Of a stretch of 64,000 nt of DNA, positions 237 through 33,300 are shown piece after piece. Under the pieces are notes generated by a model. That model made no database searches, had not been told where the DNA came from, and saw only the letters and a list, made by a program, of their open reading frames with translations. Location: contig OZ320323.1 in assembly GCA_976226885.1 (NCBI GenBank), positions 2,914,001 to 2,978,000 of the forward strand, read 5' to 3'. The position numbers and the translations under genes are program-made. The DNA is from Iphione sp. A-MEVVRFRX5. Lineage: Eukaryota. Numbering within the stretch: the first letter of the stretch is position 1; the number at the start of each line of letters is the position of its first letter.

Positions 237-302
237 CGGCGTAAGAAACTTGTACGTAAGATGTGCATTCTCTGCTAAGACATCTGCTGCCAGGTCGTAG
301 TA
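237..302 (-). CDS. TTC30: IFT70 exon 8 (YYDLAADVLAENAHLTYKFLTP)
   Basis: 66 nt, CAG acceptor, GTAAGT donor. Confidence 0.93.
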
Positions 303-2881
303 CTGTGAAAAGGATGTAAATGCATGATATACATGTTGTATTCTGGATTTGTACATTTAATCACACATGCACAGAATATGAACCACGCTTATCATACTAG
401 CTAGCATGTGCATATGGTATGAAATAATAAAAGATAAATGATCGTCTTTAGGAAAACATATTACACGGAATAGTACACGACAATATACAGCCAACACTCT
501 CTAGCTTAATGGTATACATTACATATATATGCATTATCATTTAGAGATTAAGTTTATTTGGACACTGAATCTTCTTTAGATGCTCAAAAGAGAATTAGCA
601 TACTTGACGTGAAGTAGATGTAAGTCGGTAAACTGATGAGGCATTAGACATGCACTCATCTCATACTTAACATAAAGTAGATGTAGGTCGGTAAACTGAT
701 GAGGCATCTGGACATGCACTCACCTCATACTTGACGTGAAGTAGATGTAAGTCGGTAAACTGACGAGGCATTAGACATGCACTCATCTCATACTTAACAT
801 AAAGTAGATGTAGGTCGGTAAACTGATGAGGCATCTGGACATATATTCGCCTCATACTTGACGTAAAGTAGATGTAGGTCAGTAAACTGACGCAGCATCA
901 TGTCACACACTATCGTCATACTTGACTCAAAGTAGAAGTAGATTGGTAAACTGACAAACACCAGGACATGCACTCACCTCATACTTGATGTAAAGTAGAA
1001 GTAGGTTGCCGAATGTTTCAGGTGGGAATGGATTTTGTTGAAGCAGGAACTGCAGCTTCTCAAAGCCTTGTGTGGCATTGTTCTCCATATTCATGAGAGC
1101 CTGGTTATGCAGTGTGACTGCATCGAGCTCCTCTTCTGCTCGGGGAGGCATGTCGGTGAGTGCCTCACATGCTGCCTCATCTGTGGAAGTGATGGAAAGA
1201 ACAAGATGATTTACATGATAGACTATTTCAGGACAGTCACAGCTCATTAAAAGGGCCCCACTACTTGCTGCAATGGTCCCTGGAGCACAGGTATACTTCT
1301 ATTAACAGAACCTCTTTACAATGAAGTTGGCTATAATTTTTGTGGCCTGCAGCCAGTATTGGCCAATCCTTTTTGAAAAAAAAGTGACAGAAAAAGAAAT
1401 GGACAAATAAAATTTTATTACTCAATAAAATACACATGAATAGTTAATAAACAATAAGCCTTGACAAATACTGCTCAACAACAAATTAATCTCGGAGAAC
1501 ACATCGACTTCATTAACAGAGGTATACCTGTACATATTTGATACATCCATCACTGTTGGCATCCCCACAGGTGGCCAATTAGTGTAAATATCCCCTAATG
1601 TATACTTATAAAACTGCACAACCTCCACAGCACCACAGTCAAATACACAATTTATATATATACATATAGATGTATCTCATGCTGGCCCAAAAGGGAGAAC
1701 AACTTACTAGGACCTATTGTTTCAGAAAAGTATTGAAATGCTTTTCCTATGCCACTCATATTTATCTTAAGGATAACAGTACCGGTTTGGATTACGAAGA
1801 ACAAGAAAGTACAAACTTTCTAAAAGATCTGCTCTTACAGTATTTAAATATTTCCAACACAGCTATGAATAGCCAGGAAGGATGTGTTACCAGGGTGGGC
1901 CTAAGGCAACACTTGAACTGTATTCACATGGTGAAGAGAAAAGTTAATGTTGGTCAACTCCAACTGGAACATAAAAAGAACACTAAAATAAAAAAGGTCC
2001 AAACACCACTTACTCACAACAGGTCCTGGTGGAGTTGCTACAACTAGTATTAACATACAGAAGGCAAGATAATTTTAAGGAAAAAGCCCAGAAAAAGTGG
2101 ACAAAGACAGACACAGAGAGAGATGGAGACAAAGCATGGATATCCTCACTATGTTTCATCATACTCGCGTGAATGTGGGTGCTCAAGTCAGTGAACAGGG
2201 AAGGGGGCTGTCTTAGTAAAGTCAGAGGAACACTTCAAGTCAACTGGAGCAAATTGAACTGTCGAATAACACCAATGTGTTGAGGAGAACTGTGCCAACT
2301 ACTTGGGATGCAGATTGATTCTGGGTCACATAATTGGAACACCTCATAGTTGTAAACACGGAGGAGAGGGCTGTCTTAGTAAACTATGAGAAACACTTCA
2401 AGTCAACTAGAGCGAACACAACTGTCAAATAACACCACCATGCTAAGGAGAAATGTGCCAACTACTTGGGGTGCAAATTCTTTCTGGGTCACATCATTGG
2501 CACACCTTAGAGTTGTGAACAGGGAGGAGGGGGGGTGGCCTGTCTTAGTAAACTAGGAGGAACACTTCAAGTCAATTTGAGGGAACAAAACTGTCAAATA
2601 ACACCACCGTGCTAAAGAGAAATGTGCCAACTACTTGGGGTGCAAATCCTTTCTGGGTCAATGGCACACCTCACAGTTGTGAACAGGGAAGGGGGGGGGC
2701 TGTCTTAGTAAACTAGGGGGGCACCTTAGTAAACTAGGGAAGAACACTTCAAATCAACTTGAAGGAACAGAAAACTTTCAAATAACAGCAACATGTTCAG
2801 GAAAAACGTGCCAACTACATCAGGTGCCGATTGATTCCGGGTAACTTGAGTCATTAGCGCATGTTCTACCCACCAGTATTT

Positions 2882-2920
<39 letters not shown>

Positions 2921-5900
2921 TTTTGTTTTTTTTGGGGGGGGATTGATAAGAAAAAACATTTTTAAAAAACTTCAAATAACATCAACAATGGAATATCGGG
3001 GACTATTGATCCCTTTGAGAGGAAAATCTCACCTGGCAAAAATGTAAAATAGCTTTCAGGAGATACTGTAGATAGATATATAATATTAACTCTCAACGGT
3101 AAGTAAGGCCTCATAAATTCAAATAAATTACCTTTCCTTCCTCACAATATTGAGATTTATGCTCTATCTGTCTCTCTGTATCTATAAATCTAAGTTTTTA
3201 TATATAGTAATGTATAAATACATGTATATATAGTCAGTACCACAAACTATACCAAAAATACCCTATTTTTTATCTTACTATAGTTTAACCGAACTCCCTG
3301 ATTGAACAATTTTGATAAACACACCCAAACTGGTTACCTTGGGCTGACTGTATATCACAATATTATATATGGACCAGTTATTTTGGGCTGACTGTATATA
3401 TCGCAATATTATATACTGAACAGTTATCTGGGGCTGACGGTATATATCACAATATTATATATGGATATCTAGATTGCACTTCTCTTATCATGAAGTTGTC
3501 AAACGTTTGATTAACTGGCTAACCAGGAGGTTAGAAAAAAAAACAGTACAGCAAGAAAGAAAACCCAATCTGAGTGGAGGCAAGTTAGTTCGACAGGCGG
3601 AGAGAAGGCAACCTTCACTTACGGTCATTAACCAGATACATGTAGGGCACTGTAAGAGGCAAGAAAGGGTTATCAATAGCATGGTGCAGGGAAGCCAAGC
3701 GAGAACATGGGTTAAACACTGCAGGTTATGTATTCGGAACATGGGAGAAACAAATTTTAAACTAGACACTTGTCGTTATTACGTGCTACCTATGACTATC
3801 TTACAACAAGGTTATCACAATAACAAATGGTAGAGAGAGAGAACAACATTGTGGTGGTGGGCGGAACATGATCATCAAATGAGGGACGCTACTAGACGAA
3901 GACCTACAGAGTCACCTGCTGACCAATGGACTGATCACTTCTTTTGAGTAGCAGCTGAACCTGAACAATCACCAGCATCCTGCCCAAAGTGTGGGAATTT
4001 GAACTATAGACAAACAAAGCTGTCCAGCATTGCAGTCAATGAGAAGGTTAAATATCTCTGTTAATATTACAGATAGAATTATTTGCTTTTAACAGCATTA
4101 AGAGTTTATATTAATCATGATTCTGACCAACTTTTGTATTTTTCCATCAATTAGACTCTTAACTTCCAAGCAGTCAAAGGTGAATATTTTAACATTGAAA
4201 AGGCCTGGGAACCTTGCAGCTTGTCTATGCCGGAAGCATGTGNNNNNNNNNNNNNNNNNNNNNNNNNNNNNNNNNNNNNNNNNNNNNNNNNNNNNNNNNN
4301 NNNNNNNNNNNNNNNNNNNNNNNNNNNNNNNNNNNNNNNNNNNNNNNNNNNNNNNNNNNNNNNNNNNNNNNNNNNNNNNNNNNNNNNNNNNNNNNNNNCC
4401 ATATTATTCAAAGATCATTTGTCTAAGTTGTGCTCCGCTCGCCCTTTCACTCCCAGACACGCCCATTTCCTCCCATGTTCCCTCCAAAGTCAATGCCATA
4501 AGCCCGATACACTCATTTCCCTAGTAGTGGAGGTCAACTAACCTGCGACTGGACAACACTGACTTTAGTCTGATCTCCACTGATAAATTCATCTATAATC
4601 TTATAATATATCTATAATATATAAAATCCTCAGTAGTACACCTTGCTAGTGTCAAATCCTTTTATAACACACTCTCCACCATTCCTTCAGATGTTCATCT
4701 GATCCCATCTAAGTGCTATACTCTTTCCTCAAACCTCTCCCAACCTTCCTTGAGATATTCATCTCACCTCCTCTAAGTGTCATATCCTTTCATAACACTC
4801 TCCAACATCCCCTCAGATGTTCATCTCACCCCATATAACATACACCCTTTCCTCATTTCATGCAAAAAATGAAAGACATCCATGAAAAATTAATTTTGTG
4901 AGCCCTGCATTAAGAAAAATTGATCATATATGATCGATTTGAATAGGAGTGGTCTGGAAAGAGTAAACTACCATACCCTTTACTCATACATTCCCAGACC
5001 TTCCCATAGAGATATTCATCTCACGACCTTCCCATACAGATATTTATCTCACCCCCTTTAAGTACCATACCCTTTACTCACACATTTCCCAACCTTCCCA
5101 TAGAGATATTCATCTTACCCTGTCTAAGTGCTATACTCTTCCCTCAAACCTCTCCCAACCTTTCTTTAGATGTTCATCTCACCTTCTCTAAGCACCACAT
5201 GCTTTACTCATGACTACCCACATTGTCATTACATATCCGGGGGGGGGGGAGTTCCATTACTGTGGCCCTTTCAACCCAATTATCAATTAATTGCAGCTAA
5301 ATGAGGGAAAATGTATGATATAAAAGGCAAAACTTCGCCAATATCTACAGTAGAGTCACCCAAAGACTGTCTCAGCTATTTCCACCACCCAGAGTTGGCT
5401 GATCACTTGTATCCTTGTACACCTCGTGGTTGGCGCTAACACTGTGGTGGATTGTTTAATTATGACTGTGCTATTCTTTTGCTTTTTACATCAATGAGTC
5501 AGTAGTGGACTGGTAGGTAGAGATCTTCATCTAGGCAAACATATACCAATGCATTTACTTATCAATATATTCTCTCAAATTCTTCCACGACCTAAATTTA
5601 ATGAACTAAAATATTCCCACAAATGTTCTCCTCTGTTTAGTGTAAGACACCGACGACTTTCTACTCTGGGTTTTATGTCTTAGTGTTAATCATGTTCAAT
5701 GAAGTCAACATTAATCAACATTACAACTATCTCCTACATTACAAAATCCCCACGGGACACTCTAGTAGTTGTGCGTAAAATAAAACCAATAAGAACGAAT
5801 AAGAATCCTCATAGAAAGGATTACATTAGTAGAAGTACTTATATCGGCATGTATGTCATATTTAAGCTTTAAACTGAGTAGCATGTTTGTTGTTTCATAG

Positions 5901-8900
5901 CCAATTAGAAGGAAATCTGAATATTAATTATTCTAGCAAAATTAAAAATTATTTGGGCTTAAATGATAAAGCAACTCAACGAAAAAAACAGGACCCTACA
6001 CCAAGCAAAATGTCAGAAGTGTGCAAGAGCATCGAACATTTAGTTGGGGGAACGATGACCAATACGGTATGTCCATCTGTCCAGTTATACATTGGTATGT
6101 GTGGGTTGTGTAGTTATATGATCTAAAGGCGACCCCTGGCGACAGATAGTGTTCGAACACAGGAAACGTACGTGGCATATATGTATTGTGCTTTTCTCAG
6201 GAAATGGACATGGAGGAATAAATAAATGTTTACAGTTAACATACAATGTATGACCATACACAAGGGCTCTCTAGCTCTCTTAATTACATGTGTATACGCC
6301 GAAGACAAAACCCCCGAATTATCACCATATACGTTTAACCGGACCCATGGACGATACCCTTAACATGTGGAGAAATGGGGTGACTTCAAGGCAGGGCTAT
6401 TGAAAGACAGGGGCACAGCTGCGGGTAAACATTCAGCTAACTCCGAGCTACTCACAGTTCTTGAGCTGATACTCAATGGCTGCCTTCAGGTTGAAGGCCT
6501 CGATCAGCGCCGTCTCGTGGAGCGTCAGGGTGTTCCCCACGCTGCGGACGTCGATTCCTTCTGTGGTCATACCCACACTCAACTCTACAGGACAATAGAA
6601 GAGAATGACAAAACAAGGGGTCAATCAGTATATACAGATCCCTTCCGCGGTCATACCCACACTCAACTCTACGGGGCAACAGAAGAGAAAACAATGTGTC
6701 AATCTCATCAAACTACTCAACACCATGCTGCTGTACAGATACAGATCCCTTCCGTGGTCATACCCACACTCAACTCTACAGGACAATAGAAGAGAACGAC
6801 AAAACAAGGGGTCAATCTCATCAAACTACTCAACACCATGCTGCTGTATATATACAGATCCCTTCCGTGGTCATACCCACACTCAACTCTACGGGGCAAC
6901 AGAAGAGAAAACAATGTGTCAATCTCATCAAACTACTCAACACCATGCTGCTGTACAGATACAGATCCCTTCCGTGGTCATACCCACACTCAACTCTACA
7001 GGACAATAGAAGAGAAAACAATGTGTCAATCTCATCAAACTACTCAACACCATGCTGCTGTATATATACAGTAGCAACTCACCGTGTGGGCAAATCAACT
7101 ATGAAAAACGACACTCTAACAAGGACAACCCTTTTTTATAGGAACGAATTTGCTGGTTACTTAAATGGTCGCATTACAGGTATTTTACTACATGTAGGTC
7201 AAAAAAGTAGGGAGGGAAAATATTCATTCAACTTGCATGGTTTTAGTGTCAACGTTTAAGGTACAGTAGGAGCTCGCCCGAGAAGTCAGCATTTGTTCCC
7301 ATCAATTTACAACCAGTGAGTGAGGTAACTACTGGGGAGAGGTAATTCCCTGTATATGATATAGAAATTGGCTCCAAAGCTATTGACCATTGGACGCTCT
7401 GGGCAGATGTGGGCATTATGAAAGTTCTACTGGATCTCAAGTAACAGGCACTGCGATAGAGGAAGCATGTACTGCATTTTACATATTTGTAACACTTAAA
7501 TAGAACGGGATGCTTACCTGGGTGTTCGCGAATACCTCGTTCAATGATATCAGCGATGTGCTTCAAGGCGGGTGCGTACTGTTTCAGCATATAGTGGCAC
7601 AGAGCGATGTTGTATGAGAGGTCGGGCTTGTAGCCTAGAATCTGCATGGCTGTGGTAAACTTCTGACAGGCTTCTTCATACTGACCTTCCTGTGAATGAG
7701 ATGGAAAATTATATCAACTACAGTATAAAAGAAACCCCCAACAACATTGCATTACGGAGAATCTGTTTCTAGATTTACTGCATAATGGGATGAATTTTCA
7801 AGGAATAAAGTACCATTTTTCCCTAACATTTATGTTTTTCTCAGTATTTTCTGGTATACTGATGAAAATTAGCAGAGACAGAAGTGCTGGGATATAGGCA
7901 CATGAGATTACACAACTACAGCACAACCGATAATTCCACGAGGAATTTGTGTCAAATCTTTGAAATAAGCGACATAATTCATGCATAAATATATTTATGT
8001 ATATGTATGTAACAGACCTTTATATAAAGACAAACTCAAATAACCTGAACAATAACAATCTTAAGACAATAATTTTGCCCTGTTTTCCTCTGTGTCCTCC
8101 ACCACGACAGGGTGGAACCAGCAGCACGCTACAGCCTGGCAGACAAAGGACTGACAAGGTCTACTCACCCCCGCCTGCTGTTATTTAAGATAATGTTAAG
8201 TACACAAAATTAAACCAGTAAAGGAATCAGCTCGTTTGAGTAGTTATAGGAGTCAAAATATCATGTCGGGGGGTTGGACAGTCAGACCGCAGTATTCGTA
8301 GGTCCCCCAAGCTCTTTAGAGCCCGAGGACAATTAATCTTGTTACATAAGCTGCTTTTTACCATGAATATATTCTTTGTCAATCAAACCTTGAAGAGAAG
8401 GCATCCCAAGTTGATCTCTGTGTCTGGATCATCTGCTGGACACTGCTCCACCAGACTCTGCGCCCCAGGTAAATCCTCCTCTCCGTATTTGATAGCTGCT
8501 TGCAGTTTGGTTATCTGAAATTATTTTAAATGTTTTCCTTATTTTTCGTCACAGCTGTAGGTTGAAAACAGAAGGTTCAAATACAATGAGTTAAACATGA
8601 CTAATCTTTATCATTATTACTGACCTATCCTTGCGAGGTTTGGACATTGTCTAAGTGTGTCTTGTGTTTGATTGCAACAACTGATGACACCTCCGCAAAA
8701 GGTGTGTAGGTCAGGAAATAATGGAATGTACAGCTACAGCAGCAATGGGTTAATTAATACCACCAACACTTTTGGACATCTACTTTGATCATCCCAAACC
8801 ACTTTCTGCTATAGAGCTGAGAAATGCTATGTGATATACTGAGAAATTAAATTTGAAAATCGGATTAAACAAGGTGAAATATGCAACAGAGCACTTACTC

Positions 8901-11790: not shown

Positions 11791-11824
11791 ATGGCCGCTT
11801 TGGGAAGCATATTGCGAAAAGGAG
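11791..11824 (+). CDS. FAM234B: FAM234-like exon 1 (MAALGSILRKG)
   Basis: ATG in a CpG-containing region, strong GTGAGT donor; phase 1 fits the exon 2 acceptor at 19720. Confidence 0.72.
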
Positions 11825-16562: not shown

Positions 16563-16605
<43 letters not shown>

Positions 16606-19600: not shown

Positions 19601-22600
19601 CACTCTCGGAAGGAACATATTGTATATGTGATAGGAAAGAACCAAGGGTGTCCTGATTAGCAGTGCCTTCCGACAGGTACTTCATTCACAGAGGAGAGCG
19701 TGTACATCTGTGTTTGCAGCCAACAACCCGTCGGCTCACCGCACCACGCAGTACGAGAAGCTGGCCCAGGACCCCAGCGACAACGAGGAGGAGGACGACG
19801 TGCTCTTCCGCCAGGGCAACGGCCTGGAGGTCACCGGGGTCACCAAGTTACAGAACGGCATCAGCAAGAACAAGCACGCCACCAGCAATGGCAACCAGGT
19901 AAGGAAATCTCCTGAAGGGGAGGCTCGAAAGGAACGTCTATATGATTTCTCCTTTTTTCCCATTATTTCTCTCAAACAAGGTTGATAGAGAGTGGCCTCA
20001 GGAGATAAAACAACTAAGAAAACCAGCTGTCCAGAAGAGGTTTCCTTCTCAGTGGATTCATTAACACAGGTGTACCCCGTACCAATGTGGTGTGGTTTGG
20101 TTACCAGTGGTGTGGTTTGGTACCATCATCTTACCATTGTTAGCTTCCCCAAGTGATTGTCTTTACTCTTCTTGCTTCATTGTATCATGAAAAGCTCCCT
20201 CTATTTTATCTATACGGAGATGATCAATAAACTCAGTTTCAATTATTCCTAGGTACCTTCACCTTACCACTGACACCCTCACCCCATCACTCCATGGTAC
20301 AGTTACCTTTACCACTGTCACCTTTCTCCCTAGGAAACCATCGAGATGGACACCATGCCTACCATTCACACAGCCCGGCGGGTCAGGAGTGACGTCAAGG
20401 TGCGTCTTGTACAAACAGGCCTCCTGACGCGCACGCGCATTGCCTGCTTCATCACTGTCCTCCTGACTGGGATCGGTATCGCCTTCGGCTTCGCCTTCAT
20501 CCTCCCCTACTTCACGGTGGGAGTCCAGCATCCCATGCTGAAGGCCTTCCATCGCAGTGCTCCCTGGACACACCTCCTGTCTGAGCTAGGTAAGGCTGAT
20601 TCATATACGCGCACATGCCTTCATACTCCCCACTTCACGGTTGGAGTCCAGCATCCCATGCTGAAGGCTTTCCATCGCAGTGCTCCCTGGACACACCTCC
20701 TGTCTGAGCTAGGTAAGGCTGATTCATATACATGCACATGCCTTCATACTCCCCTACTTCACGGTGGGAGTCCAGCATCCCATGCTGAAGGCTTTCCATC
20801 GCAGTGCTCCCTGGACACACCTCCTGTCTGAGCTAGGTAAGGCTGATTCATATACATGCACATGCCTTCATACTCCCCTACTTCACGGTGGGAGTCCAGC
20901 ATCCCATGCTGAAGGCCTTCCATCGCAGTGCTCCCTGGACACACCTCCTGTCTGAGCTAGGTAAGGCTGATTCATATACACGCACATGCCTTCATCCTTC
21001 CCTACTTCACGGTGGGAGTCCAGCATCCCATGCTGAAGGCCTTCCATCGGAGTGCTCCCTGGACACACCTCCTGTCTGAGCTAGGTAAGGCTGATTCATA
21101 TACACATACACACCTTCATACTTCTCTACTTCACGGTGGGAGTCCAGCATCCCATGCTGAAGGCCTTCCATCGGAGTGCTCCCTGGACACACCTCCTGTC
21201 TGAGCTAGGTAAGGCTGATTCATATACACATACACACCTTCATACTTCCCTACTTCACGGTGGGAGTCCAGCATCCCATGCTGAAGGCCTTCCATCGGAG
21301 TGCTCCCTGGACACACCTCCTGTCTGAGCTAGGTAAGGCTGATTCATATACACATACACACCTTCATACTCCTCTACTTCACGGTGGGAGTCCAGCATCC
21401 CATGCTGAAGGCCTTCCATCGGAGTGCTCCCTGGACACACCTCCTGTCTGAGCTAGGTAAGGTTGATTCATATACACATACACACCTTCATACTCCTCTA
21501 CTTCACGGTGGGAGTCCAGCATCCCATGTTGAAGGCCTTCCATCGCAGTGCTCCCTGGACACACCTTCTGTCTGAGCTAGGTAAGATTTGTACATGCGCA
21601 TCCTTTCGCTGAAAAGGGAGAGCCCAGTCTACATACATAGCTTCTCTCCAAAATATGTAAGGGTAATTTATATACATATATACACCTCCTGTCTGAAATA
21701 GGCAAGACCAGTTGAAAAACACACATCTTTTTGAAATAAGTGTGGCTAGTTTACATTCACAAATTCTGTTCAGAATAGGCAAGGGTAATATGTGTACGCA
21801 ACTTATGTTTCCTGTCTCATGTGATCTGTATGATTCGTAAGGAACTGAGCTGGCTACGCAGCTGCTTGGCATTGATGGTAACAGTCATATTTGTTTGTTT
21901 TAATTATTTGAAATGACTTATTTTTATTTATGGCGTGTAAAAGGACCTAGTTGGCAGGGTGTCTGCTGGAGTTGTGGTAGTCTTGTTTACTTGCTTTCCA
22001 GGTGTCGATGGTGATGGTCATACTTATGTATTTAAAATGTTTTTGAGTATGTATTTCTTTTTATTTCATTTTGATTTCTTAGGGACCCAGTCTGCTGTGT
22101 GACTGCTCAGTGTCGATGGTGATGGTCATGTTTACTTATATAAATTGTTATTAATCTATTTTTATATATGTTTATTTATGATTTATTAGGAACTGAGTCT
22201 GCTGTGCGACTGCTTGATGTCAATGGTGGTGATGATCATGTTTACTTATATAAATCATTATTAATTTATTTTATATATGTTTATGTGTGATTTATAAGGG
22301 ACTGAGTCTGCTGTGTGGATGCTCAATGTCGATGGTGATGGTCATGTTTACTTATATAAATTGTTATTAATTTGATTTGTGATTTATAAGGGACTGAGTC
22401 TGCTGTGAGACTGCTTGATGTCAATGGTGATGGTCATGTTTACTTATATAGATCGTTATTAATCTATTTTAATATATGTTTATTTGTGATTTATTAGGGA
22501 CTGAGTCTGCAGTGCGACTGCTCGATGTCGATGGGGATGGTCGTCAGGACGTCCTGTTTGGTACCATGCAGGAGTTTGGGTTTAGGGTCAGCACCACAGA

Positions 22601-25600
22601 CATGATGGAAACCCTCTGTAAGCAGAAAAGTAAGTCTGAACGCCATTAACGGTTACTTTTCTACTCTTATTACTTATTAGTGAACAAGGACAAAACATTC
22701 ATCTTATCAGTAATCATACGTTTTCAAAGGCCTTCAGTTTTCAATGTATAATTTAAGTTCATACCTTTTCTTTCATTGAAAAAAACAACTCATTTCTAAC
22801 TTTTTATTGTGTTGTGAGCTTCACTACTGGAGACAGCTCGACCCACGTGACCTGCTTGTTTTCAGACCTGCCCTTTCCCTGCGTGGGGATGATCATTGCC
22901 TTGCGGGGCACAGATGGCACTGAGCTCTGGCGTCTCATGACGTACTCCGGCGTCACAGACCTGGACTGTGACGTCATTGACGTCAATTTGGACGGCCGCA
23001 AAGACTGTATTGCCACTGGGCGAATGGGAACCTTGATGGCGTTCGATGTCAGAAATGGTGAGAATAAAAACCAGACAGCCCGTCGGTTTTCCTGTCAGTC
23101 AGTCTGTCAGTCTGTGTGTCTGTCTGTTTGTCTCTCAGTCTGTTTGTTTGTCTTTTGTCTGCTTATTAAGTTACGTAAATTATGTTTCTTTTATTGTGAG
23201 TTGAAGGTTTAACGCCAAACCTCAACAACAGAGCATTATTAGATTCCTCTATTCATTCTATTATTTTTTTTCATGGGTATTACATGTATACTTTTCTAGT
23301 CAACCATATGTGCATGTACTGCAGAGGTCTGAGGTCAGAGGTCAGGTTAATTCTACCAGACAATCTGTTGTACCCCAGATAATGAAGTTTCTGGCAGTGA
23401 AGCTTTTTGCACAGAACACATTCACTTTGTTAACGGAGGGTGTACCTCTATTCAGTAGGCCCTATTGCATCTGTCTCCACCCACCAGTGGACATCATAGA
23501 AATCTGTCAGCCAGTATGTTTTCATCTATGCAGGTACGGTTCTCTGGCACGGCGACTCAAAGAACCTCTTCCGGACGTGGAACTTTTATAACCCAGCAGT
23601 GCTGCCTGACCTTGATCAAGATGGCGTGCCTGAGCTGCTCGTTACCCATGGTGGAGACGATGCCTTCCCACACGCGGTGAGTAAATGCACTTAGACTCAT
23701 CTGTCAGTAGACCGTGACTGCTTGGTGTACTTGATTGGCCTCACTGCCTCTTCTGGATGGTAACCTCCTTCACCACTGTACTGTGACTACTAGTGATAAT
23801 AGGCTCTTTACCTCTCGGGCCACTGGACCGTAACCTGCTGGTATGAATGTATGTGTACCACTAGTGATACTAGGCTGGCTAACTTTCAAAACACTGGACC
23901 GTGACATGTTTGTATGAGTGTATATGTACCATTAGTGATACTAGACTGGTTTAAGTCTAGAATCACTGGACCATGACTTGTTTGTGTGAGCGTGTGTGCA
24001 CCACTAGCGATACTAGACTGGTTTAATTCTAGAATCACTGGACCATGACTTGTTTGTGTGAGCGTGTGTGCACCACTAGCGATACTAGACTGCGATACTA
24101 GACTGGTTTAATTCTAGAATCACTGGACCATGACTTGTTTGTGTGAGCGTGTGTGCACCACTAGTGATACTTGGCAGGTTACCTCTCAATTCACTAGACT
24201 GTGATCTGCTTATGTGAGTGTATGTGTACTACTAGTGATCATTTTAATGTGAATTATATCTTTCCATTTTTATACTGAAATCATCCTGATTCACCGAAGT
24301 GATTTGCTTTCAGTTGGTTAAAGTCAGTGTTTCTTGCACGGAAGCCACAAACAATATTATTTAGGTTATTTTAGAACTTAAAATCCTAGTGCTTCGACTC
24401 CATTTAGTGACTCGATTGAATTAGCAATACTGTAGTGTGTTTGTTTTGGTGTTTTAGCTTTGTAAGTAAAGTTTGGTTTGTGAATAATGTTGCGAGTGTT
24501 TTTACATTGTTGTGTATGTGTACCTAGAAATACACACGTTTTTCATGTGTAGTGTTCATGTAGTCATGTTTTGTTTTATGAATGTTGTATTGTTTGCTAG
24601 CACGCAGTCTTGTGTCGTCATATTTATGATTTATGTTGTTTTTGTCACATCAGCCTGTCTTTCATCCGTGGCGGTTTCAGAGGTAAATATGCCATCTTAA
24701 TGGTCGCCATCGTTTCATCGCTTTCTGTTAAGGTTCCCTAGAAGAAATTAACATCATTTGTTGAGAGTTCCCAAACTAATTATGTGGTGCACTGTTAGTT
24801 TTGATGTGTTTGTTTCTCTTAGAATCTTCCTCCACATGAAACATACTTCAGAAAAGCATGCTGGGTTGATATTGGTGCTTTTCTCTAGTATTAACTTAAT
24901 TAATGGGGAGAATAAGGTGGTAGTTTTCTTTAGTAACATGCTTATTGTCTCCGCACTCCAAGATGAGTTTGGATCCTTAGGATAACTACTGTCTGACCTT
25001 CCATCACAGCATTGTGGGTCTTATAACTTCTCTTAAGTCAAGTAAATCAAACGTTGGATACTATGCTTATACTCATATAGACACTTGCTACTAGCTTATT
25101 TCTAATCCATTTGAAGTAATTTAAAAGTAATTTTAATTTAAAATATTTCAACATATTCTGCCCACCAACACACACACAAATACACACTCACCGTGTGGGG
25201 TGTAACATTGTGCACTCAGGCATATGATTCATTATGCAAGTGTGGTGGTGATAGGTAGTAGAAATGTGTGGGACAATAGACCTTGAAGGTTCACTCTCTT
25301 GTCTATCCGGGGATTGGACTTTAGAGACCACAAGGATACAGAGACTCATTCATATATAATCCATATAACATAGGCTGTAACCTCCTTGATATTACCTCCT
25401 ACAGATACTGTCACTCCCGTCTGTGAGCCGCCAAACACCCATTTCCATGCCCCCCCCTTGATAAAATGTACGCTGAGGCCGTAATTCACTATAAAATCCT
25501 TTATCACCCAGGGTCCCTGCTCAGCCAGACTGAATTCACTGTAAACATTTTGGTCAAACCGGACTTGAACTTCGGGATGTTACGTCCTTAAAATGCATAT

Positions 25601-27311
25601 ATTGTAAATAGTTTAATGAAACTTAATCATTTGGATAAAACGACTATAATAATTATCATTTATTTTGTAAACATTCTTTTGTGTAATACTGTATTTAGTA
25701 TTATTGTTGATTGTTACTTTTTATTTTTCTCCACAGAAATTAATGGCTCACAAATCGATGGTAAATATAAACTTTTTTCTTTATGTGCTGTAAAGTTAAA
25801 AGGAAAACAGGTTCATTTTAATAGATTCCTTACAGCAAAAATTATATGTTCGAAGTAATAATCTGTGAAAAAAAGGTTGTTTTAAGTGTTTCATATTTTG
25901 AACAAAGATTTCAGTGATATGTCATGATATTCTGATTCCCTCTACTTGACCTAAGCAGTTTACTATAATCTACATGAAAGGTCTTTCACTAATTCACGGT
26001 GTCTGGGAGAATGGTGCAGTTGTCACGCTAATCTAGTACAGGTTCATGTATACCTCTGTTAACGAAGTGGATATGTTTCGAGATTTCACTTCCTTGTGAA
26101 GCATGTAATTCTAGTAGGGATTTTTACCAATATTTAATGCCCCTACATGTCATTTATTTTACATGTATGTACATGTATTTGTTACCTCTCTTTTCGTTGA
26201 ATGTTAAAAAGAATTGATCGATCAGAGTGTAATGGGGCAAACCAATTTTACACAGATAACCAGCTGTATTATCAAGACATTTCATTTTCAGAGGATTTAT
26301 TAATCAACGTATACCTGTATTACCAGTATCTTCTCTGTAATGACTAAACTTGAATAAGTTTGCCCGCTAACTCATGCTCTCATCTCCGCCTTACTCCCGC
26401 AGTCTCGCCACAGGGCCGGTCGCATGCTGCTGCTGAGTGGCAGGACAGGCCAGTCCCTGGGCCGGGCGCTACCTGTACCTCAGACCCGCCAGACCTACAT
26501 GCCGCCCATTTTACACACCACCAAAGATGGCTCCATGTACATCCTGTTCGGTACGGGCGAGGCCATGGTGACAGGTGAGGCTCAGTGACAGTATATGTAC
26601 TCAGGACTTACAGAGGTCATTGTGACAGGTGAGACTCAGTCGCAGTATATGTACTCGGAACTTGTAGAGGCCATGGTGACAGGTGAGACTCACTGACAGT
26701 CAGTCTCACCCTACGATCAGCTGCCTTGGGCGACCATTTGCCTTAAGAGACCACTTTTGTACAGAACAGATTGGTTCTCTCTATATTTATAACCAATGCC
26801 TTTGGAGACCATTTGCCTAAAGAGACCACTTTTCTTAAGTCCCTCTGGTGGTCGCATAAGGCGGAGGCAACTGTATACGTACTCGGGACTTGTAGTGGCC
26901 ATGGTGACAGGTAAGGCTTAGTGAGAGTATATGTACTCGGGACTTACAGTGGCCATGGTGACAGGTAAGGCTTAGCGACAGTATATGTACTCGGGACTTG
27001 TAGAGGCCTTGTTGACAGGCAAGGCTCAGTGACAGTATATGTACTCAGGACTTGTAGAAGCCATGGCGACAGGTGAGGCTCAGTGACAGTATATGTACTC
27101 GGGACTTGTAGAAGCCATGGCGACAGGTGAGGCTCAGTGACAGTATGTATACTCACAGCTTATAGAGACCATGGTAACAGATGAGGGTAAATGACAGTAC
27201 ATATGCACTTGGTAATTGTCGAGGCCATGGTGACATGTGAGGCTCAGTGACAGTACATGTACACTTACCCATGTATTCCCCATGCACCATCTCTTCCCCT
27301 GTTTCTCTGTC

Positions 27312-27348
<37 letters not shown>

Positions 27349-30300
27349 TTATCTGTCTCTTTTTCTCCCTCCCCTCCCTCTCTGTCTGTGTCTCTGTCTC
27401 TCTTCCTTCCTCTCTCCCTCTGGCTCTGCCTTTCTGTCTCCCCTTCCTCTACCTCTCGCCCTCCCTCTGTAACTGCCCCTCATCTTTCTCTGTCTCCTGT
27501 CTTTCTCTCTGTTGGCCTTTTCACCTCTGATAGAATTAACTAGACAAGCTGTATTGTTGGTTCTCGCTCTGTTCTAGGCTCCCTCTTCATGATCTCGGTG
27601 CCGGACCTGTACCGCTATGTCCGCAGCTTGAACGCCACTGCAGAGGTGCCCAACACCAACGGTACATACAAGGCATGGTCAAATCTCATCTGTGATGCCA
27701 CTGGCGTGTGTGAAATCTTCAGGTATGTCCCTCTTTTACTCAAGTAATGTCAGCTCTCGGTATCCAAACACTCCCCGTACAAGTTTACCTCACATCTCAA
27801 TGCATTTTTAGGGAACGGTTTGTCTTCCAATCACTTATTCCTGTTTCGTTGAGGTAATTAGGGCTGCCTGTGCCATAGTGAGAGAGACCTTGGAGGTCAT
27901 ATGGTATGTGCAAGTCTTGTGAGCGGGAATGTGAACAAGTTCAGTAAACATTGAAAACATTCACAAGCTGTCATCTTTCCATGAAGATATATTGAGACAA
28001 CATGAGACGTCATGTGGTGAGTTGTCCTGGATGAATTCTTGGTGACTTCTATTGCGTACGAGAGAAATAGTGAAGATTACTGGTAAATAACAACAACTAG
28101 AACATACAAACATGATCTTTCAGTTGAGGGGGAGGTGGGTTATAAACACCATCCCTAGAGGTAGTGATTGAACTGTGAGGATCTTGCAGTTCTACTGATA
28201 TGTGTGGACCTCACTGGGGATGGTGTTGTGTTTTGGTTTGTTACAGTGATCATGATATAACTGCACATTCATTTCTTGGTGACAGTGGCAACATGAAGAA
28301 TCTCGTGGTTCTTGGGATGTCTGTAGACCAACCAGGGACAGTATTTTGTTTTGGTTTGTTACACTGATCATGGTATAACCGTATGTTCATTTGTTGGTTA
28401 CAGTAGCAGCATGAAGGGTCTCATGGTTCCACCAGTTTGTGTAGACCTCACCGGAGACGGTGTTCGAGACATTGTGATGGCTGCCTACGATGGCACGGTG
28501 GAGGTGTGGGATGGGCAGACCATGACTGAGGTATGGAAGAAAGCCTTTACCAACTACGAGGCACACAGGTGAGCTGGCAGACCATCGGCTACATTACATT
28601 TCTATCATACTAGACCCAAGCTGGAACTGGATCTGTTGCTGAACCATACATGTAGGGGAGAAAGACTAACGATGCATACTTTATTTATTGAAATTGGTCT
28701 TTTTCTGATTAAAACCGTTTGAATGCTATAATTTATACTAAAAATCATAAGAGCAATATACTGTCATTTCTTGATATCCAAATGGTCCTTGCCTTTCGGA
28801 AATTGAGTATATTTTCTTATATTGAGTTGTAACTGTATCGTTTGTACACAGTTTGCTGCGACTAATTTTCTTCGGAAATCACATATATGCAGATGCTAAG
28901 TGTGTGTGCCCTTTGGGTCTGTACTGTATAATATTTATTCTTCCTTCTAGTGCACCTGCACCTGCTTATTTCAACTCAGATGGAACACTGGACCTGATGT
29001 TACATCTCAACCATGGTTCTTGGCCCCACTTTAACCATTCCAAGGTACGGTAGCCACTGCCTGGTAGAATCAACCCCTATTATCTGAGACCTCCTCTCAG
29101 ACATCCTTATTGACTGATATCTCACTCTCTGAAAGCTTATCTGCTGCCTGGTTTAATCAGGTCCTATTATCTGACACCTCCTTCTCTGACAACTAGCCAC
29201 TGCTTGGTATAATCGACCCCTATTATCTGACACTTCACTCTCCGACAGCTTAGCTACTGCAAGGTTTAATCTAATCCTATTATCTGACACCTCCTTCTCT
29301 GACAACTAGCCACTGCTTGGTATAATCGACCCCTATTATCTGACACTTCACTCTCCGACAGCTTAGCTACTGCAAGGTTTAATCTAATCCTATTATCTGA
29401 CACCTCCTTCTCTGACAACTAGCCACTGCTTGGTATAATCATCCCCTATTATCTGACACTTAACTCTCCGACAGCTTAGCTACTGCAAGGTCTAATCTAA
29501 TCCTATTATCTGACACCTCCTTCTCTGACAGCTAGCCACTGCTTGGTATAATCATCCCCTATTATCTGACACTTCACTCTCTGACAGCTTAGCTACTGCA
29601 AGGTTTAATCTAATCCTATTATCTGACACCTCCTTCTCTGACAGCTAGCCATTGCTTGGTATAATCGCCCCTTATTATCTGACACCTGACTCTCCGACAG
29701 CTTAGCTACTGCAAGGTTTAATCCAATCCTATTATCTGACAGTTTCCTCTCCTACAGCTAGCCACTGCCTAGTATAGTAAACCCCTTATAATCTGACACC
29801 AGACTCTCCGACAGCTTAGCTACTGCAAGGTTTAATCTAATCCCATTATCCGACAGTTTCCTCTCTGACAGCTAGCCACTGCCTAGTATAGTAAACCCCT
29901 TATAATCTGACACCTCACTTTCCGACAGCTTAGCCACGATATGGTTCAATCAAATCCTGTTATCTGACACCTCACTTTTTGATAGCTAACCACTACAATT
30001 TTCAATCAAAGTCTATCATTGGACACCTCACTCTTTATCATCCTTGTTTCCTGACCTATATATATATATATATATATTTAGTCACTCCAGTCAACTGATT
30101 GTCGATGTATTTTATTATGTATGGAATACATAACTTTGCTACGACAGCTGAAACAGTAGGAGAAATTTTCATGGCCCCTCTGTATAGTTTCCGTGTAATA
30201 AATGAGCTTTGTCATAAGATGCCAGAGTCGGTGATGTAAGGTAAGGTATGGTAAGGACTCATTGTCAGACATGCCTCTTTATTTTACCTTCATTGACGCA

Positions 30301-33300
30301 GCTGCATCTGTCACTGGCCAGTGTTACTGAATTTACTTCTAAGACCTCTGCATAGTAGTAAATACATGTATATTGCTGCCCACACTAATCTAACTCAAGT
30401 CTATTCTTTATGGATGAAGGTTACACGAAGTGTGCAGTTTCTCGGCTGAGTGATAAGTAACTGATAGTATAGAGGAAGTAACAATTATATGGGATGGATT
30501 CATGACTATTGATAAGTATCAACAATTTATAAGTTGTAATCAATCTAGGCTTTCCGCGTAAGACTTCTTCCTCCTATCTGATATACTTTTTACCCTAAAA
30601 CAGCCCCTGTTCTACAGATATAGCAAAGACTTCGCTGACCCCTCCCCAGCGACCAGCATTCACTGTCGTCACATGATTCTGGTACACATTCCTATTTTAT
30701 TTTTTTTTATATTTTATATTTTTTATACACAATCAACTACCTCCCACTAGTGGCCACCTGGCTTGCTTTGGTAGTTGATTTGCTGGAACCGGCCATGACT
30801 GCTAGCAAGAGTTCCCACTGTACATCCATGTCCTCAACTGGTGTATTCAGTGTGTTGTATTCCCTGCATCTGCTCCAGGTGATAATTCTGGATGGTACGA
30901 ATGGTGATATGAGGTATTGAGAGTTCCCGCTGTACATCCATGTCCTCAACCTGTGTATTCAGTGTGTTGTATTCCCTGCATCTGCTCCAGGTGATAATTC
31001 TGGATGGTACGAATGGTGAGACGCTATGGAGTTTGGATACTGACCAGCATGAGATGACATCAGACCTGGTTATCCGCACGGTGGCGCCACATCGAGATGC
31101 CTACGTCTTCCGCATACAGGGTCGGCGGGGTAAGAAGCCACTGAATGCTGGGACGACGACGACGACCCCATCCATGAAGAAAACTGGAAGACAACAGCGG
31201 CAGCGGAGGGACGCTGGGGTGGCCCCACCTAAGGTAGATATAACAGCTAATAAGACTTTATACTGGTACAAAGTCTACACATTGCTGGCAAGAGGATAGC
31301 TTGTTAAAACTCAGGAACGAGAACTGTTTTCTGCTGACTTGAATGTCATACCATCACATAATGTCAGATTGATAATCTGGTACGGGAGAGGTTGGGACAG
31401 GGGTTACAGCGATTATTTGTTGTACAGATTTGTTGGGTTTGCTGATTTTGGTTTTGAGTCTCTCTTTTATTACTGTAAGTAAAACATGGCGCCCAGGCCG
31501 CTGTAAGATGTAGCAGACAAGGATGGGCTCACTTCCTCAATCTGTTGATGCTATATCGAAAGTGGATTAAAACAGTTTCCATTTTATATGGCTCACTAGT
31601 ATATCAGCATAGTTGGTGAAGAATAATAAGAAAGAGAAGATTAGTGAAATTATTTGTTGTTCTCTCTCTTGAAGGCTCCCAGTGACTATGAGGACTACCA
31701 TTACAATGACTATGGAGGTCACAGGGACTACGGCGACTACCAGTATGTCCCCTTGAATGGGGGTTACTCCCATTACCAGCAGGTGAGCTTCTCAGAAAGT
31801 ACCTATTTACAATGGCGGGAAGATGCAGTGACTGTGGGTTGCTTTGATTATTGGGCCCAGTGCAGTATAACAGGTCAGCGGGACTACGGCAACTACCAGT
31901 ACGTCCCCCTGAGTAGGGGTTACTCTTATTTCCAACAGGTGAGCTATTCAGAAAGTACCTAATTATAATGGCAGGAAGAGGTGGTGACTGTGGGCTGCTT
32001 TCATTATTGGGCCCATTGCAGTCTAACTTAGGTTAGTGGGACTACAGCAGCTGCCAGTACGTCCCCCTGAGTAGGGGTTACTCTTATTTCCAACAGGTGA
32101 GCTATTCAGAAAGTACCTAATTATAATGGCAGGAAGAGGCGGTGACTGTGGGCTGCTTTCATTATTGGGCCCATTGCAGTCTAACTTAGGTTAGTGGGAC
32201 TACAGCAGCTGCCAGTACGTCCCCCTGAATGGGAGTTATTCCCATTACCAGCAGGTGAGCTTCTCAGAAAGTACCTATTTACAATGGCAGGAAGATGCGG
32301 TTGGTGCAACTGTGGGTTGCTTTCAGTATAGCGCCCGGTATGATATAACTTTATTTGATATACATGTATGTTGTAGGTGTGAGAAAGAATAATCTCTCAC
32401 AATCTCCTCACCTCTGCTTTCTTCTTCTTCTTCTTCTTCTTCTTCTTCTTCTGCTGCTTCTTCTTTTTCTATTACCCATCCTCCTCCTTCCTGTCTTGCT
32501 CCCCCTCTTCCCACCTGCCTCAGAGGAGGTTGCCCATGCGCAAAGGAATGCATACAGAATTGATCGTGTGATAATATCGAAATAACACCAGGCACTTCTT
32601 CAGCAGAATGTAAACAGTGTCGTGGTGTCATTTCTACATTATTACATGAAGATCAGTTAATTTCCAGAGGTCCTGTGGTCACCAGTGGTGCCTCCCTCTT
32701 CCTGACAACCGACCATAACCACCACTGTTTTACAGCCAGTGTGCAGCGAACATTTGCACCTTTTTTTTTATTATTTCTTTGAAAACAGTGAACCAGCATC
32801 AGCCAGACAGGCTGGTTTCCAGTCGGGGTTGTTGATGATACATTACATCAAGATAGATAGCAGCAGTTGTAGCTTAAAAACCTGGAATATTAGTCCAACA
32901 TAGTATACCTATTCTAATCTAATCTGTTCTGCCAGGCCAAATAACATTAATCATACATCAAAATGTCTATGGTATTATGTCAGGTTGAGGAGATTTTGCT
33001 TCCATTGTTGTAGAATGTCCCATTTGAAGTGTGATCTCTTATTTGTTCCATTGTTTTATTGTCCTGCTAAGTGTTGTTTTGTTCATGTATGCACTATGTG
33101 GAGCAGTGTTCATTCTGAACCTGTCTGTGTAATGGATGGATCACTGAATGTTGAAGTAACGGGTACTGCTGATGTCACTTTTACGAAATTGCGACATTGT
33201 CTCAATTTTAAACGATTTGATTGGTCGATTTTGACCATGATGTAACAATTAGTAAAACTTACATCCGCACTACCCGTTTCTTTTGCCACTGGCGATCAGT

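What the first reader, a model, noticed from the sequence alone, without database searches (positions are those of the whole stretch)
598..32320. Systematic amplification of exon-intron boundaries: at least 8 splice sites in two genes expanded into tandem decoy arrays
Seen: arrays whose unit is part exon, splice site and part intron occur at IFT70 exon 7 donor and exon 6 acceptor, and at FAM234-like exon 3 donor, exon 4 acceptor, exon 7 donor, exon 9 acceptor, exon 11 acceptor and exon 12 donor. That is 8 of the 45 exon ends modelled here. Donor arrays extend downstream and acceptor arrays upstream, so the exon is left intact. Units are 54-158 bp and mutually unrelated, so this is not one transposon family. 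Five units carry AG|GT at the junction (CTAG|GTAAG, ACAG|GTGAG, CCAG|GTGAT, GCAG|GTGAG, TGAG|GTGAG). Established: AG|GT juxtapositions are the substrate both for recursive (ratchet) splicing and for the tandem-duplication model of intron gain. Inference: this lineage either generates duplications preferentially at splice junctions or tolerates them there, and the arrays form an age series (perfect to decayed) for watching decoy splice sites being silenced or recruited.
Basis: partly seen in the sequence, partly recalled or inferred. Interest (0 to 1): 0.75.

Follow-up and report, generated by a model that had tools for sequence, protein, structure and literature searches.

The report
Minisatellites that copy splice junctions
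Eight tandem repeats in two neighbouring genes are built from an exon edge, its splice site and a piece of intron, a known oddity ("mirage" minisatellites of amphioxus) seen here at unusual density in a different invertebrate, leaving about 35 look-alike splice sites whose use could not be tested.

Summary
All eight arrays exist at the stated junctions of an IFT70/TTC30 gene (minus strand) and a FAM234-like gene (plus strand). In each, the repeat unit is exon end, splice site and intron piece.

- **Junctions are old.** Orthologous loci from a related species (L001, L002) have every one of these splice junctions at the same codon and no array there. The arrays are therefore young additions to old introns, and no intron was gained.
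- **Units are local.** They are unrelated to each other and occur nowhere else in the 1.18-Gb genome.
- **More than chance.** On array-collapsed gene models, 8 of 14 minisatellites span a junction against 2.2-2.7 expected (P about 3e-4 to 1e-3, on a window picked for this feature). Genome-wide, tandem triplets of the donor motif AGGTRAG are 2-3.7 times commoner than same-composition control motifs.
- **Decoys are mostly intact.** 29 of 35 keep GT or AG, so there is little sign of silencing.
- **Untested.** No RNA or read data could be obtained, so splice-site use and copy numbers are unverified.

This is the "mirage" minisatellite class known from amphioxus. This scan already reported it in three other genes of this same genome, with a fourth first-reader note not followed up. 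It is a new member of a known kind.

The parts
978..1180 (-). IFT70/TTC30 exon 7 (authentic donor GAG|GTGAGT after base 978)
   Evidence: 93% aa identity to the L002 ortholog with the exon end at the same codon. Sequence read.
599..1009 (-). Donor array of IFT70 exon 7: 64-bp unit (about 32 nt exon + 32 nt intron), authentic unit plus 5 decoys. Only 1 decoy keeps GT.
   Evidence: TRF; copy table.
6456..6584 (-). IFT70 exon 6 (authentic acceptor ...CCTGTAG|AGT before base 6584)
   Evidence: The transcript-derived relative P0003 and spider TTC30A P0018 run REHP|ELSVGMTTEGIDVR straight across this junction. L002 ortholog.
6552..7071 (-). Acceptor array of IFT70 exon 6: 107-bp unit (74 nt intron + 33 nt exon), 4 decoys, all with pyrimidine tract and AG.
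20334..20589 (+). FAM234-like exon 3 (transmembrane segment), donor CTAG|GTAAGG
   Evidence: The ortholog L001 has the same donor at the same codon. Phase check.
20493..21585 (+). Donor array of exon 3: 124-bp unit (97 nt exon + 27 nt intron), 8 decoys 96-98% identical, all with TAG|GTAAG. The first decoy lies +123 nt on, in frame and open.
22498..22629 (+). FAM234-like exon 4 (FG-GAP-type repeat)
   Evidence: 79% aa identity to L001 10620-10748. Acceptor and donor conserved.
22003..22541 (+). Acceptor array of exon 4: 107-bp unit (63 nt intron + 44 nt exon), 4 decoys, all with AG.
26403..26574 (+). FAM234-like exon 7, donor ACAG|GTGAGG
   Evidence: Pfam PF23727 positions 149-202. L001 donor at the same codon.
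26559..27262 (+). Donor array of exon 7: 54-bp unit (16 nt exon + 38 nt intron), 9 decoys, 7 with GT. Split by a 173-bp dispersed element at 26704-26877.
   Evidence: The element has many copies genome-wide.
28404..28568 (+). FAM234-like exon 9
   Evidence: 78% nt identity to L001 16550-16726. Acceptor conserved.
28229..28464 (+). Acceptor array of exon 9: 118-bp unit (57 nt intron + 61 nt exon), one full decoy (84%) plus a partial copy upstream.
29051..30036 (+). Intronic array (113/56-bp unit) starting about 6 nt after the exon 10 donor. It copies no exon sequence.
30991..31233 (+). FAM234-like exon 11, acceptor ...CTCCAG|GTGATA
   Evidence: 66% aa identity to L001 17795-17968. Acceptor conserved.
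30808..31031 (+). Acceptor array of exon 11: 112-bp unit (71 nt intron + 41 nt exon), one decoy, 97% identical.
31675..31782 (+). FAM234-like exon 12 (Tyr-rich tail), donor GCAG|GTGAGC. This is the least certain junction.
   Evidence: GT at the same point in L001, where aa similarity ends. No downstream exon was found.
31724..32339 (+). Donor array of exon 12: 158-bp unit (59 nt exon + 99 nt intron), 3 decoys, all CAG|GTGAGC. The first decoy lies +156 nt on, in frame and open.
2203..5197 (-). Four purely intronic minisatellites in IFT70 intron 6 (2203-2717, 3333-3465, 4648-4838, 5017-5197). Counted in the permutation test as the arrays that do not span a junction. An assembly gap lies at 4243-4398.
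23777..24171 (+). Purely intronic minisatellite (72/85 bp) in FAM234-like intron 6

Best explanation
These are 'mirage' minisatellites.

Shown:
- In each case a short local tandem duplication (54-158 bp) straddled a pre-existing, conserved splice junction.
- The duplicated unit was then amplified inside the intron. Shared variants among neighbouring copies and period-doubled sub-blocks point to unequal exchange or replication slippage.
- The arrays arose after the split from the related species, in introns that are much older. They now make up about 30% of the FAM234-like gene's length.
- Using the exon-contiguous sites gives an unbroken, conserved reading frame.
- These arrays span junctions about 3 times more often than uniform seeding predicts. 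Genome-wide, tandem triplets of the donor motif are 2-3.7 times commoner than same-composition controls. The cause is unknown.

Inferred:
- The copy contiguous with the rest of the exon remains the site used, that is the first donor or the last acceptor.
- The choice would follow from 5'-to-3' donor selection, as in the human F7 intron 7 repeat, and from exon definition for acceptors, because only the last acceptor is followed by a whole exon and a donor.
- Decoy use would be removed as premature-stop transcripts.
- The decoys are mostly neutral passengers.
For: - Arrays and unit anatomy.
- Gene identities: Pfam PF23727 (FAM234A/B beta-propeller), 38.8 bits against a cutoff of 26.4. Solved IFT70 chain 8bd7_C, E 4e-19.
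- Orthologous loci L001 and L002 are collinear exon by exon. Exons are 68-78% identical in DNA and introns cannot be aligned.
- Every junction is at the same codon in the related species. No array lies at any of these junctions there.
- Phases chain across FAM234-like exons 2-12 when the exon-contiguous sites are used.
- Nearly all decoy uses give a frameshift or an in-frame stop.
- Units are unrelated to each other and were not found elsewhere in the genome.
- Enrichment in the window: 8 of 14 against 2.2-2.7 expected, P 3e-4 to 1.3e-3.
- Enrichment genome-wide: triple AGGTRAG at 52-82 nt pitch gives 4651 matches against 1244, 1971 and 2359 for three same-composition controls. At 102-132 nt pitch it gives 3705 against 1051. 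Single-copy frequencies of the four motifs are equal, 53 against 55-68 in 200 kb.
- A randomly drawn 10-kb stretch holds a further acceptor array in a transglutaminase gene (L009 1547-2102).
- Literature: PMC3087553 (mirages in amphioxus Adh3 and globin genes) and PMC1557585 (F7 intron 7 repeat).
Against: - No RNA data: no sequencing run was listed. Which sites are used is inference only.
- The window was chosen because of these arrays, so the in-window P value is post hoc.
- The genome-wide motif counts are per match, not per array. Dispersed repeat families inflate them, and one control motif (GARGTGA) is itself partly donor-like.
- In the random 200 kb only 1 of 17 arrays was a verified junction array. 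That number is too small to test anything.
- The assembly has many gaps, about 1 per 9 kb in this window. Copy numbers of the 96-98% identical arrays (exon 3, exon 11) may be wrong.
- The exon 12 donor lacks a known downstream exon.
Confidence: 0.85

Rival explanations
1. There is no junction preference. The two genes are simply saturated with minisatellites and are compact, so many founding duplications hit an exon end by chance.
For: Minisatellite density is 0.60 per kb in the two genes against 0.085 per kb in 200 kb of random genome. A random 100-bp unit has an 8-31% chance of spanning a junction in the FAM234-like gene. The window was selected post hoc. IFT70 alone is not significant (2 of 6, P 0.10).
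Against: The Poisson-binomial tail for 8 of 14 is 3e-4 to 1.3e-3. The genome-wide excess of donor motifs in tandem triplets is 2-3.7 fold at two pitches. Purifying selection should remove junction-spanning duplications, so it cannot account for an excess of them.
Confidence: 0.12
2. A mutational process aimed at splice junctions seeds the duplications. One example would be transcription- or splicing-linked DNA breaks repaired with fill-in. It would act mainly in certain genes.
For: Junction excess in the window and genome-wide. Arrays cluster in the two genes at 7 times the random-sample density, while the rest of the window is at the average (0.10 per kb). The junction lies in the middle part of every unit, with an exon share of 0.30-0.78 in all 8. 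A ninth array starts 6 nt from a donor.
Against: No mechanism is shown. The central position of the junction is only marginally unusual. I computed about P 0.02 by hand, assuming 10 nt are needed on each side for detection. An alternative is that amplification, not seeding, is biased: 12 of 14 arrays are richer in G+C than the non-array intron (41-53% against 38.6%), and exon-adjacent seeds are G+C-richer.
Confidence: 0.25
3. The decoy ladders are functional. They could be regulated alternative or recursive splice sites, or intermediates of intron or exon gain kept by selection.
For: 29 of 35 decoys keep GT or AG. The first decoy donors of exon 3 (+123 nt, where the array period is 124) and of exon 12 (+156 nt, where the period is 158) are in frame and open. 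Five units carry AG|GT.
Against: The arrays are absent from the related species, so nothing is conserved. Intact sites are expected anyway in copies 84-98% identical. Most decoy uses give premature stops. The array-bearing introns are old and short. There are no RNA data.
Confidence: 0.08
4. The arrays are assembly artefacts of a gap-rich assembly.
For: Seven N gaps in 64 kb. Two arrays are 96-98% identical over 0.2-1.1 kb.
Against: Six of the eight arrays have copies that differ at 5-22% of positions in a fixed order, which mis-assembly does not create. A transposable element sits inside one array. No gap touches an array. The same architecture occurs in a randomly drawn locus and in amphioxus, where it was checked at the bench (PMC3087553).
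Confidence: 0.03

Closest known systems
'Mirage' minisatellites of amphioxus (Adh3: Canestro et al. 2002, PMID 12087171, cited through PMC3087553; globin genes BflGb6 and BflGb9: PMC3087553)
   Same: Tandem, minisatellite-size units (10-160 bp there, 54-158 bp here) that span an exon-intron boundary. Both 5' and 3' boundaries are affected. Many copies keep AG/GT. Units are locus-specific. Copies are 81-100% identical there and 78-98% here.
   Different: The host genome differs: 1.18 Gb in 11 chromosome-size pieces of 56-179 Mb, which from my own knowledge is not amphioxus-like. Earlier notes of this scan call it an annelid-type worm, which I did not verify. Density is much higher: eight junctions in two adjacent genes. 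Normal splicing and length instability were shown at the bench in amphioxus and could not be tested here.
Human F7 intron 7 37-bp repeat (PMC1557585)
   Same: The first repeat element spans the exon-intron boundary, so the authentic donor is followed by identical 5' pseudo-sites. This matches the exon 3, exon 7 and exon 12 donor arrays.
   Different: In F7 it was shown by experiment that the most upstream site is chosen and the pseudo-sites stay silent. Here that is only inferred. F7 is a single locus, and half of the arrays here are acceptor arrays, for which F7 gives no precedent.
Intron gain by tandem duplication across an AG|GT (Rogers model; examples in PMC2891723 and PMC4974935)
   Same: A tandem duplication that yields two copies of a splice signal. 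Five units carry AG|GT.
   Different: In that model the duplication lies inside an exon and creates a new intron. Here the duplication spans an existing junction of an old intron, and no new intron position results.

Membership tests
Mirage minisatellites | Head-to-tail tandem repeat with a minisatellite-size unit | tested here: met
   TRF: periods 54-158 bp, 1.9-8.8 copies.
Mirage minisatellites | The unit spans an exon-intron boundary and carries the splice signal. Donor and acceptor sides both occur. | tested here: met
   Copy tables. Exon ends fixed by orthology and phase. Four donor arrays and four acceptor arrays.
Mirage minisatellites | Locus-specific origin, not a dispersed element | tested here: met
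   Units contain the gene's own exon sequence, have no cross-similarity and have no other genomic match. In those searches only the best 39-40 candidates were scored.
Mirage minisatellites | Regular splicing is not disturbed | not testable with these tools
   No sequencing run was listed. Only the reading-frame argument is available.
Mirage minisatellites | Length instability or polymorphism between haplotypes | not testable with these tools
   No second haplotype copy in the assembly and no reads.
Intron gain by tandem duplication (Rogers model) | The intron is absent at that position in relatives | tested here: not met
   All eight array-bearing introns lie at identical positions in L001 or L002.
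Recursive (ratchet) splice sites | A full 3' splice site (pyrimidine tract and AG) directly followed by a 5' splice site (GT) | tested here: inconclusive
   AG|GT is present in five units. Only the exon 11 acceptor decoy has a full pyrimidine tract plus AG|GTGAT, and its GT context is weak.
Recursive (ratchet) splice sites | Located in very long introns, with RNA evidence of stepwise removal | tested here: not met
   Host introns are 0.4-5.3 kb. RNA evidence could not be obtained. The length criterion is from my own knowledge.
F7-type 5' pseudo-site repeat | The first element spans the exon-donor boundary, followed by identical pseudo-donors | tested here: met
   Exon 3: 8 identical TAG|GTAAG decoys. 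Exon 12: 3 identical CAG|GTGAGC decoys. Exon 7: 7 of 9 decoys keep GT.
F7-type 5' pseudo-site repeat | Pseudo-sites are silent and the most upstream site is used | not testable with these tools
   No RNA data.
FAM234A/B (Pfam PF23727 beta-propeller) | Score above the Pfam gathering threshold | tested here: met
   Exon 5 stretch: 38.8 bits against 26.4. Exons 6 and 7 match the following profile positions below threshold. Exons were searched one by one.
IFT70 / TTC30 | Sequence match to solved or named IFT70/TTC30 proteins | tested here: met
   8bd7_C IFT70, E 4e-19. 81-95% identity to TTC30 fragments, including a named TTC30A.

The most novel reading that the evidence does not exclude
This lineage has a mutational process that makes short tandem duplications centred on splice junctions. 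It could be linked to transcription or splicing and concentrated in particular genes. It would produce thousands of natural ladders of competing splice sites. Some proximal decoys, such as the in-frame +123-nt and +156-nt first decoys of exons 3 and 12, would be used as alternative donors.
Probability: 0.2. Interest if true: 0.75.

Novelty: new member of a known kind. Interest (0 to 1): 0.42.

Why it matters
A genome that carries large numbers of exact or near-exact copies of its own splice sites, right beside the authentic ones, is a natural large-scale version of the F7 minigene experiment. It could show how the spliceosome picks one site among identical competitors, for acceptors as well as donors. 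If the junction excess reflects where duplications arise and not merely which ones survive, it would point to DNA damage or repair tied to exon-intron boundaries. For genome annotators, such arrays are a practical source of mis-called exons. For intron evolution, this case is a negative example: many junction duplications and no new intron.

Tried and rejected
- **Genome sample.** I planned a 2-Mb random sample. Only 200 kb was allowed, too little for a direct test: 17 arrays, 1 verified junction array.
- **Random-sample candidates rejected.** L007 3311-3486, L014 2030-2139 and L003 645-1090 carry splice-like motifs but no coding evidence next to them.
- **Exons 1 and 13.** Neither exon of the FAM234-like gene was found by comparison with L001.
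- **Synteny.** IFT70 is not within 10 kb of the FAM234-like ortholog in L001, so synteny is unconfirmed. L001 and L002 are contigs with different coverage labels, so they may not come from the same organism.
- **Organism.** The listing of cluster members gave no names.
- **Primary paper.** The Canestro 2002 paper (PMC117041) is not held.
- **Two-motif pattern.** AGGTRAGT twice (1535 against 974) is contaminated by a dispersed element that carries two such motifs. I used the three-motif version instead.
- **Silencing of decoys.** The loss of GT in 4 of 5 IFT70 exon 7 decoys is not significant once shared ancestry of copies is allowed for.
- **Spliced model.** Exons were searched by reference one at a time and phases were checked arithmetically.
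- **Costly searches.** The large protein search, the structure tools and the complex tool were not needed.


Full report

Tandem Repeats Finder reports 18 arrays with a period of 40 bp or more in the 64-kb window. Fourteen of them lie inside two genes. I read each of the eight flagged arrays base by base and aligned every copy to the copy that adjoins the exon.

In every case the unit is an exon end, the splice site and a piece of intron:

| Junction | Unit | Exon + intron |
|---|---|---|
| IFT70 exon 7 donor | 64 bp | 32 + 32 |
| IFT70 exon 6 acceptor | 107 bp | 33 + 74 |
| FAM234-like exon 3 donor | 124 bp | 97 + 27 |
| Exon 4 acceptor | 107 bp | 44 + 63 |
| Exon 7 donor | 54 bp | 16 + 38 |
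| Exon 9 acceptor | 118 bp | 61 + 57 |
| Exon 11 acceptor | 112 bp | 41 + 71 |
| Exon 12 donor | 158 bp | 59 + 99 |

The units share no similarity with one another.

The assembly gaps were checked first, as asked. The N runs at 4243-4398, 12999-13145, 14581-14830, 17203-17377 and 17497-17719 touch no array and no exon. The first lies in IFT70 intron 6 and the others lie between the genes. Nothing below depends on continuity across a gap, and none was filled.

**2. Are the exon ends right?**

- The stretch around exon 5 of the plus-strand gene matches Pfam PF23727 (FAM234A/B beta-propeller) at 38.8 bits against a cutoff of 26.4. Exons 6 and 7 match the next profile positions.
- The minus-strand gene matches solved IFT70 (8bd7_C, E 4e-19) and TTC30 fragments at 81-95% identity.

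A word search with exon 3 returned a 70%-identical open reading frame on a 368-kb contig of a public metagenome assembly (locus L001). The same search with IFT70 exon 5 returned a 130-kb contig of the same sample (locus L002).

Both loci are collinear with the window exon by exon. Exons are 68-78% identical in DNA and introns cannot be aligned.

Every splice junction that I compared sits at the same codon in both species, including all eight that carry arrays. A transcript-derived relative (P0003) and a spider TTC30A (P0018) read straight across the IFT70 exon 5/6 junction.

With the exon-contiguous sites, the phases of FAM234-like exons 2-12 chain without a break. I checked this arithmetically.

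The weakest junction is the exon 12 donor. GT lies at the same point in both species, exactly where protein similarity ends, but I found no exon 13.

**3. What are the arrays?**

L001 and L002 have no tandem repeat at any of these junctions. IFT70 intron 5 is about 100 bp in L002 and 933 bp in the window, and about half of that is array.

Array copies are 78-98% identical to the authentic unit, while the surrounding introns have diverged beyond alignment. So the arrays are much younger than the species split and sit in old introns.

Whole-genome DNA searches found no copy of any unit elsewhere. In those searches only the best 39-40 candidates were scored. The dispersed sequences in the gene are:
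- a 173-bp element that has inserted into the exon 7 array (26704-26877);
- a repeat of about 360 bp at 24939-25309;
- a CT-rich family at 27290-27512.

The arrays are therefore local duplications that straddled a junction and were then amplified. The exon 3 array has two sub-blocks with shared variants, and several arrays have a doubled period in TRF. Both fit unequal exchange. After collapsing arrays, the FAM234-like span shrinks from 12.7 to 8.9 kb.

This is the structure named 'mirage' minisatellite in amphioxus Adh3, later found in amphioxus globin genes (PMC3087553). The human F7 intron 7 repeat is a single-locus donor example (PMC1557585).

**4. More than chance?**

I collapsed every array to one unit, placed a unit of each array's length at random in its gene, and required at least 10 nt on each side of a junction. 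Result: 8 of 14 observed against 2.2 expected (P 2.8e-4). Counting edge cases the expectation is 2.7 (P 1.3e-3). Conditioning on tolerated classes it is 2.4 (P 4.8e-4). The FAM234-like gene alone gives 6 of 8 against 1.8 (P 0.002). IFT70 alone gives 2 of 6 against 0.6 (P 0.10). The window was picked for this feature, so these values are post hoc.

For an unbiased view I drew random stretches of the genome, but only 200 kb was allowed.
- It holds 17 arrays with a period of 40 bp or more, or 0.085 per kb. The two genes have 0.60 per kb and the rest of the window about 0.10 per kb.
- One of the 17 is a six-copy acceptor array in front of a transglutaminase exon (L009 1547-2102; I recognised the exon as transglutaminase by eye from its translation, without a database search). 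Three other candidates had no coding evidence.

I then used whole-genome pattern counts, which need no annotation.
- Three AGGTRAG motifs at 52-82 nt pitch occur 4651 times. The same motif read backwards occurs 1244 times, and a permuted motif and its reverse occur 1971 and 2359 times.
- At 102-132 nt pitch the counts are 3705 against 1051.
- As single copies the four motifs are equally common: 53 against 65, 55 and 68 in the random 200 kb.
- By distinct loci among the first 100 listed matches on the largest chromosome, I counted by eye about 48 in 46.7 Mb for the donor motif and 26 in 79.2 Mb for the permuted control.

These counts are inflated by dispersed families, and one control is partly donor-like. 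They agree in direction and size with the in-window test, at roughly 2-4 fold.

**5. State and likely fate of the decoys**

There are about 35 decoy sites. All 10 acceptor decoys keep AG and their pyrimidine tract, and 19 of 25 donor decoys keep GT. Only the IFT70 exon 7 array has lost most GTs (4 of 5). That is not significant once shared ancestry of copies is considered.

Using a decoy would almost always shift the frame or meet a stop within 5-81 codons. There are two exceptions. The first decoy donor of exon 3 lies +123 nt on, in an array of period 124. The first decoy donor of exon 12 lies +156 nt on, in an array of period 158. Both are in frame and open. This may be chance, roughly 0.05-0.1 each by my estimate.

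No RNA data could be obtained. That the exon-contiguous site is used is therefore inferred from the reading frame, from conservation and from the F7 precedent. For acceptors it is inferred from exon definition.

**6. What it is not**

- No intron was gained. All array-bearing introns are shared with the related species.
- The one intron difference I saw is an extra 118-nt intron in L002 that splits what is a single IFT70 exon 4 in the window. It has no duplication signature.
- The host introns are 0.4-5.3 kb, unlike the very long introns where recursive splicing is known (my own knowledge).
- Assembly artefact is unlikely for the six diverged arrays. Copy numbers of the two youngest arrays remain unverified.

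**7. Organism and novelty**

The genome is 1.18 Gb with 11 chromosome-size pieces of 56-179 Mb. From my own knowledge that does not fit amphioxus. It is compatible with an Eisenia-type earthworm (PMC7253469), but I could not establish the species.

Earlier notes of this scan on the same genome describe the same phenomenon in three other genes (BLTP3, a WD40 gene and a giant gene), with a fourth first-reader note not followed up. They also call it 'mirage' minisatellites in a worm. I treated them as leads.

My window adds:
- checks of every junction against orthologous loci;
- a permutation test;
- a density comparison with random genome;
- the genome-wide motif test.

In the held literature, only one paper combines 'mirage', minisatellites and splice sites. 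A genome-wide excess outside cephalochordates therefore appears unreported, but the kind of element is known.

**8. Verdict**

This is a new member of a known kind. Interest is moderate, mainly as a natural test bed for splice-site choice and as a possible hint of junction-linked duplication.

Noticed in passing
L002:9486-9603 versus window 8389-8514 (-): The related species has an extra 118-nt GT...AG intron splitting what is a single IFT70 exon 4 in the window. It is AT-rich and has no similarity to the flanking exon, so there is no tandem-duplication signature. Whether it was gained or lost is undecided.
   Followed up: partly
window 26704-26877: A 173-bp dispersed element (85-93% identical copies on many chromosomes, 2728 first-look candidates) has inserted inside the exon 7 donor array. 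The array therefore predates that insertion.
   Followed up: partly
window 20590-20712 and 31783-31938: The first decoy unit of two donor arrays has a length that is a multiple of three (123 and 156 nt), while the array periods are 124 and 158. Both are open in frame, so use of these decoy donors would insert 41 or 52 residues without breaking the frame.
   Followed up: partly
L009:1547-2102 (G000:C17:26644001-26654000): A randomly drawn stretch holds a six-copy, 92-bp acceptor array in front of a transglutaminase exon (2052-2283). A second, purely intronic 56-bp array lies in the next intron (6954-7164).
   Followed up: yes
window 237-10900 and 19720-32377 versus the rest: Minisatellites with a period of 40 bp or more are about 7 times denser in the two genes (0.60 per kb) than in 200 kb of random genome (0.085 per kb) or in the rest of the window (0.10 per kb). 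The arrays cluster by gene.
   Followed up: partly
all eight junction units (window) and L009: The splice junction lies in the middle part of every unit, with an exon share of 0.30-0.78. This is mildly more central than uniform placement predicts.
   Followed up: partly
window 27290-27512 and 24939-25309: Two further dispersed repeat families lie in FAM234-like introns. One is a CT-rich unit of about 220 bp that is itself tandem at other loci. The other is an element of about 360 bp, about 70% identical to many copies.
   Followed up: no
window 33500-47000 and 60612-63998: The second half of the window is mostly mobile elements. There is a 976-aa open frame at 35671-38598 that I took for a retroelement without a domain search. 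A G+C-rich element at 41641-46603 has an 81-bp tandem repeat inside its open frame (42131-42407). A gypsy-type open frame runs off the window end.
   Followed up: no
window 48785-49201 (+): A stop-free stretch with an FG-GAP-like 'GDVDGEGSLDLV' motif, possibly an exon of another FG-GAP-repeat gene. Arrays at 50459-51106 and 54234-54485 lie nearby and were not classified.
   Followed up: no
L002:10537-11927: The related species has a 15-bp x 93 array inside IFT70 intron 6, more than 100 bp from either exon. Arrays occur there too, but not at junctions in these two loci.
   Followed up: no
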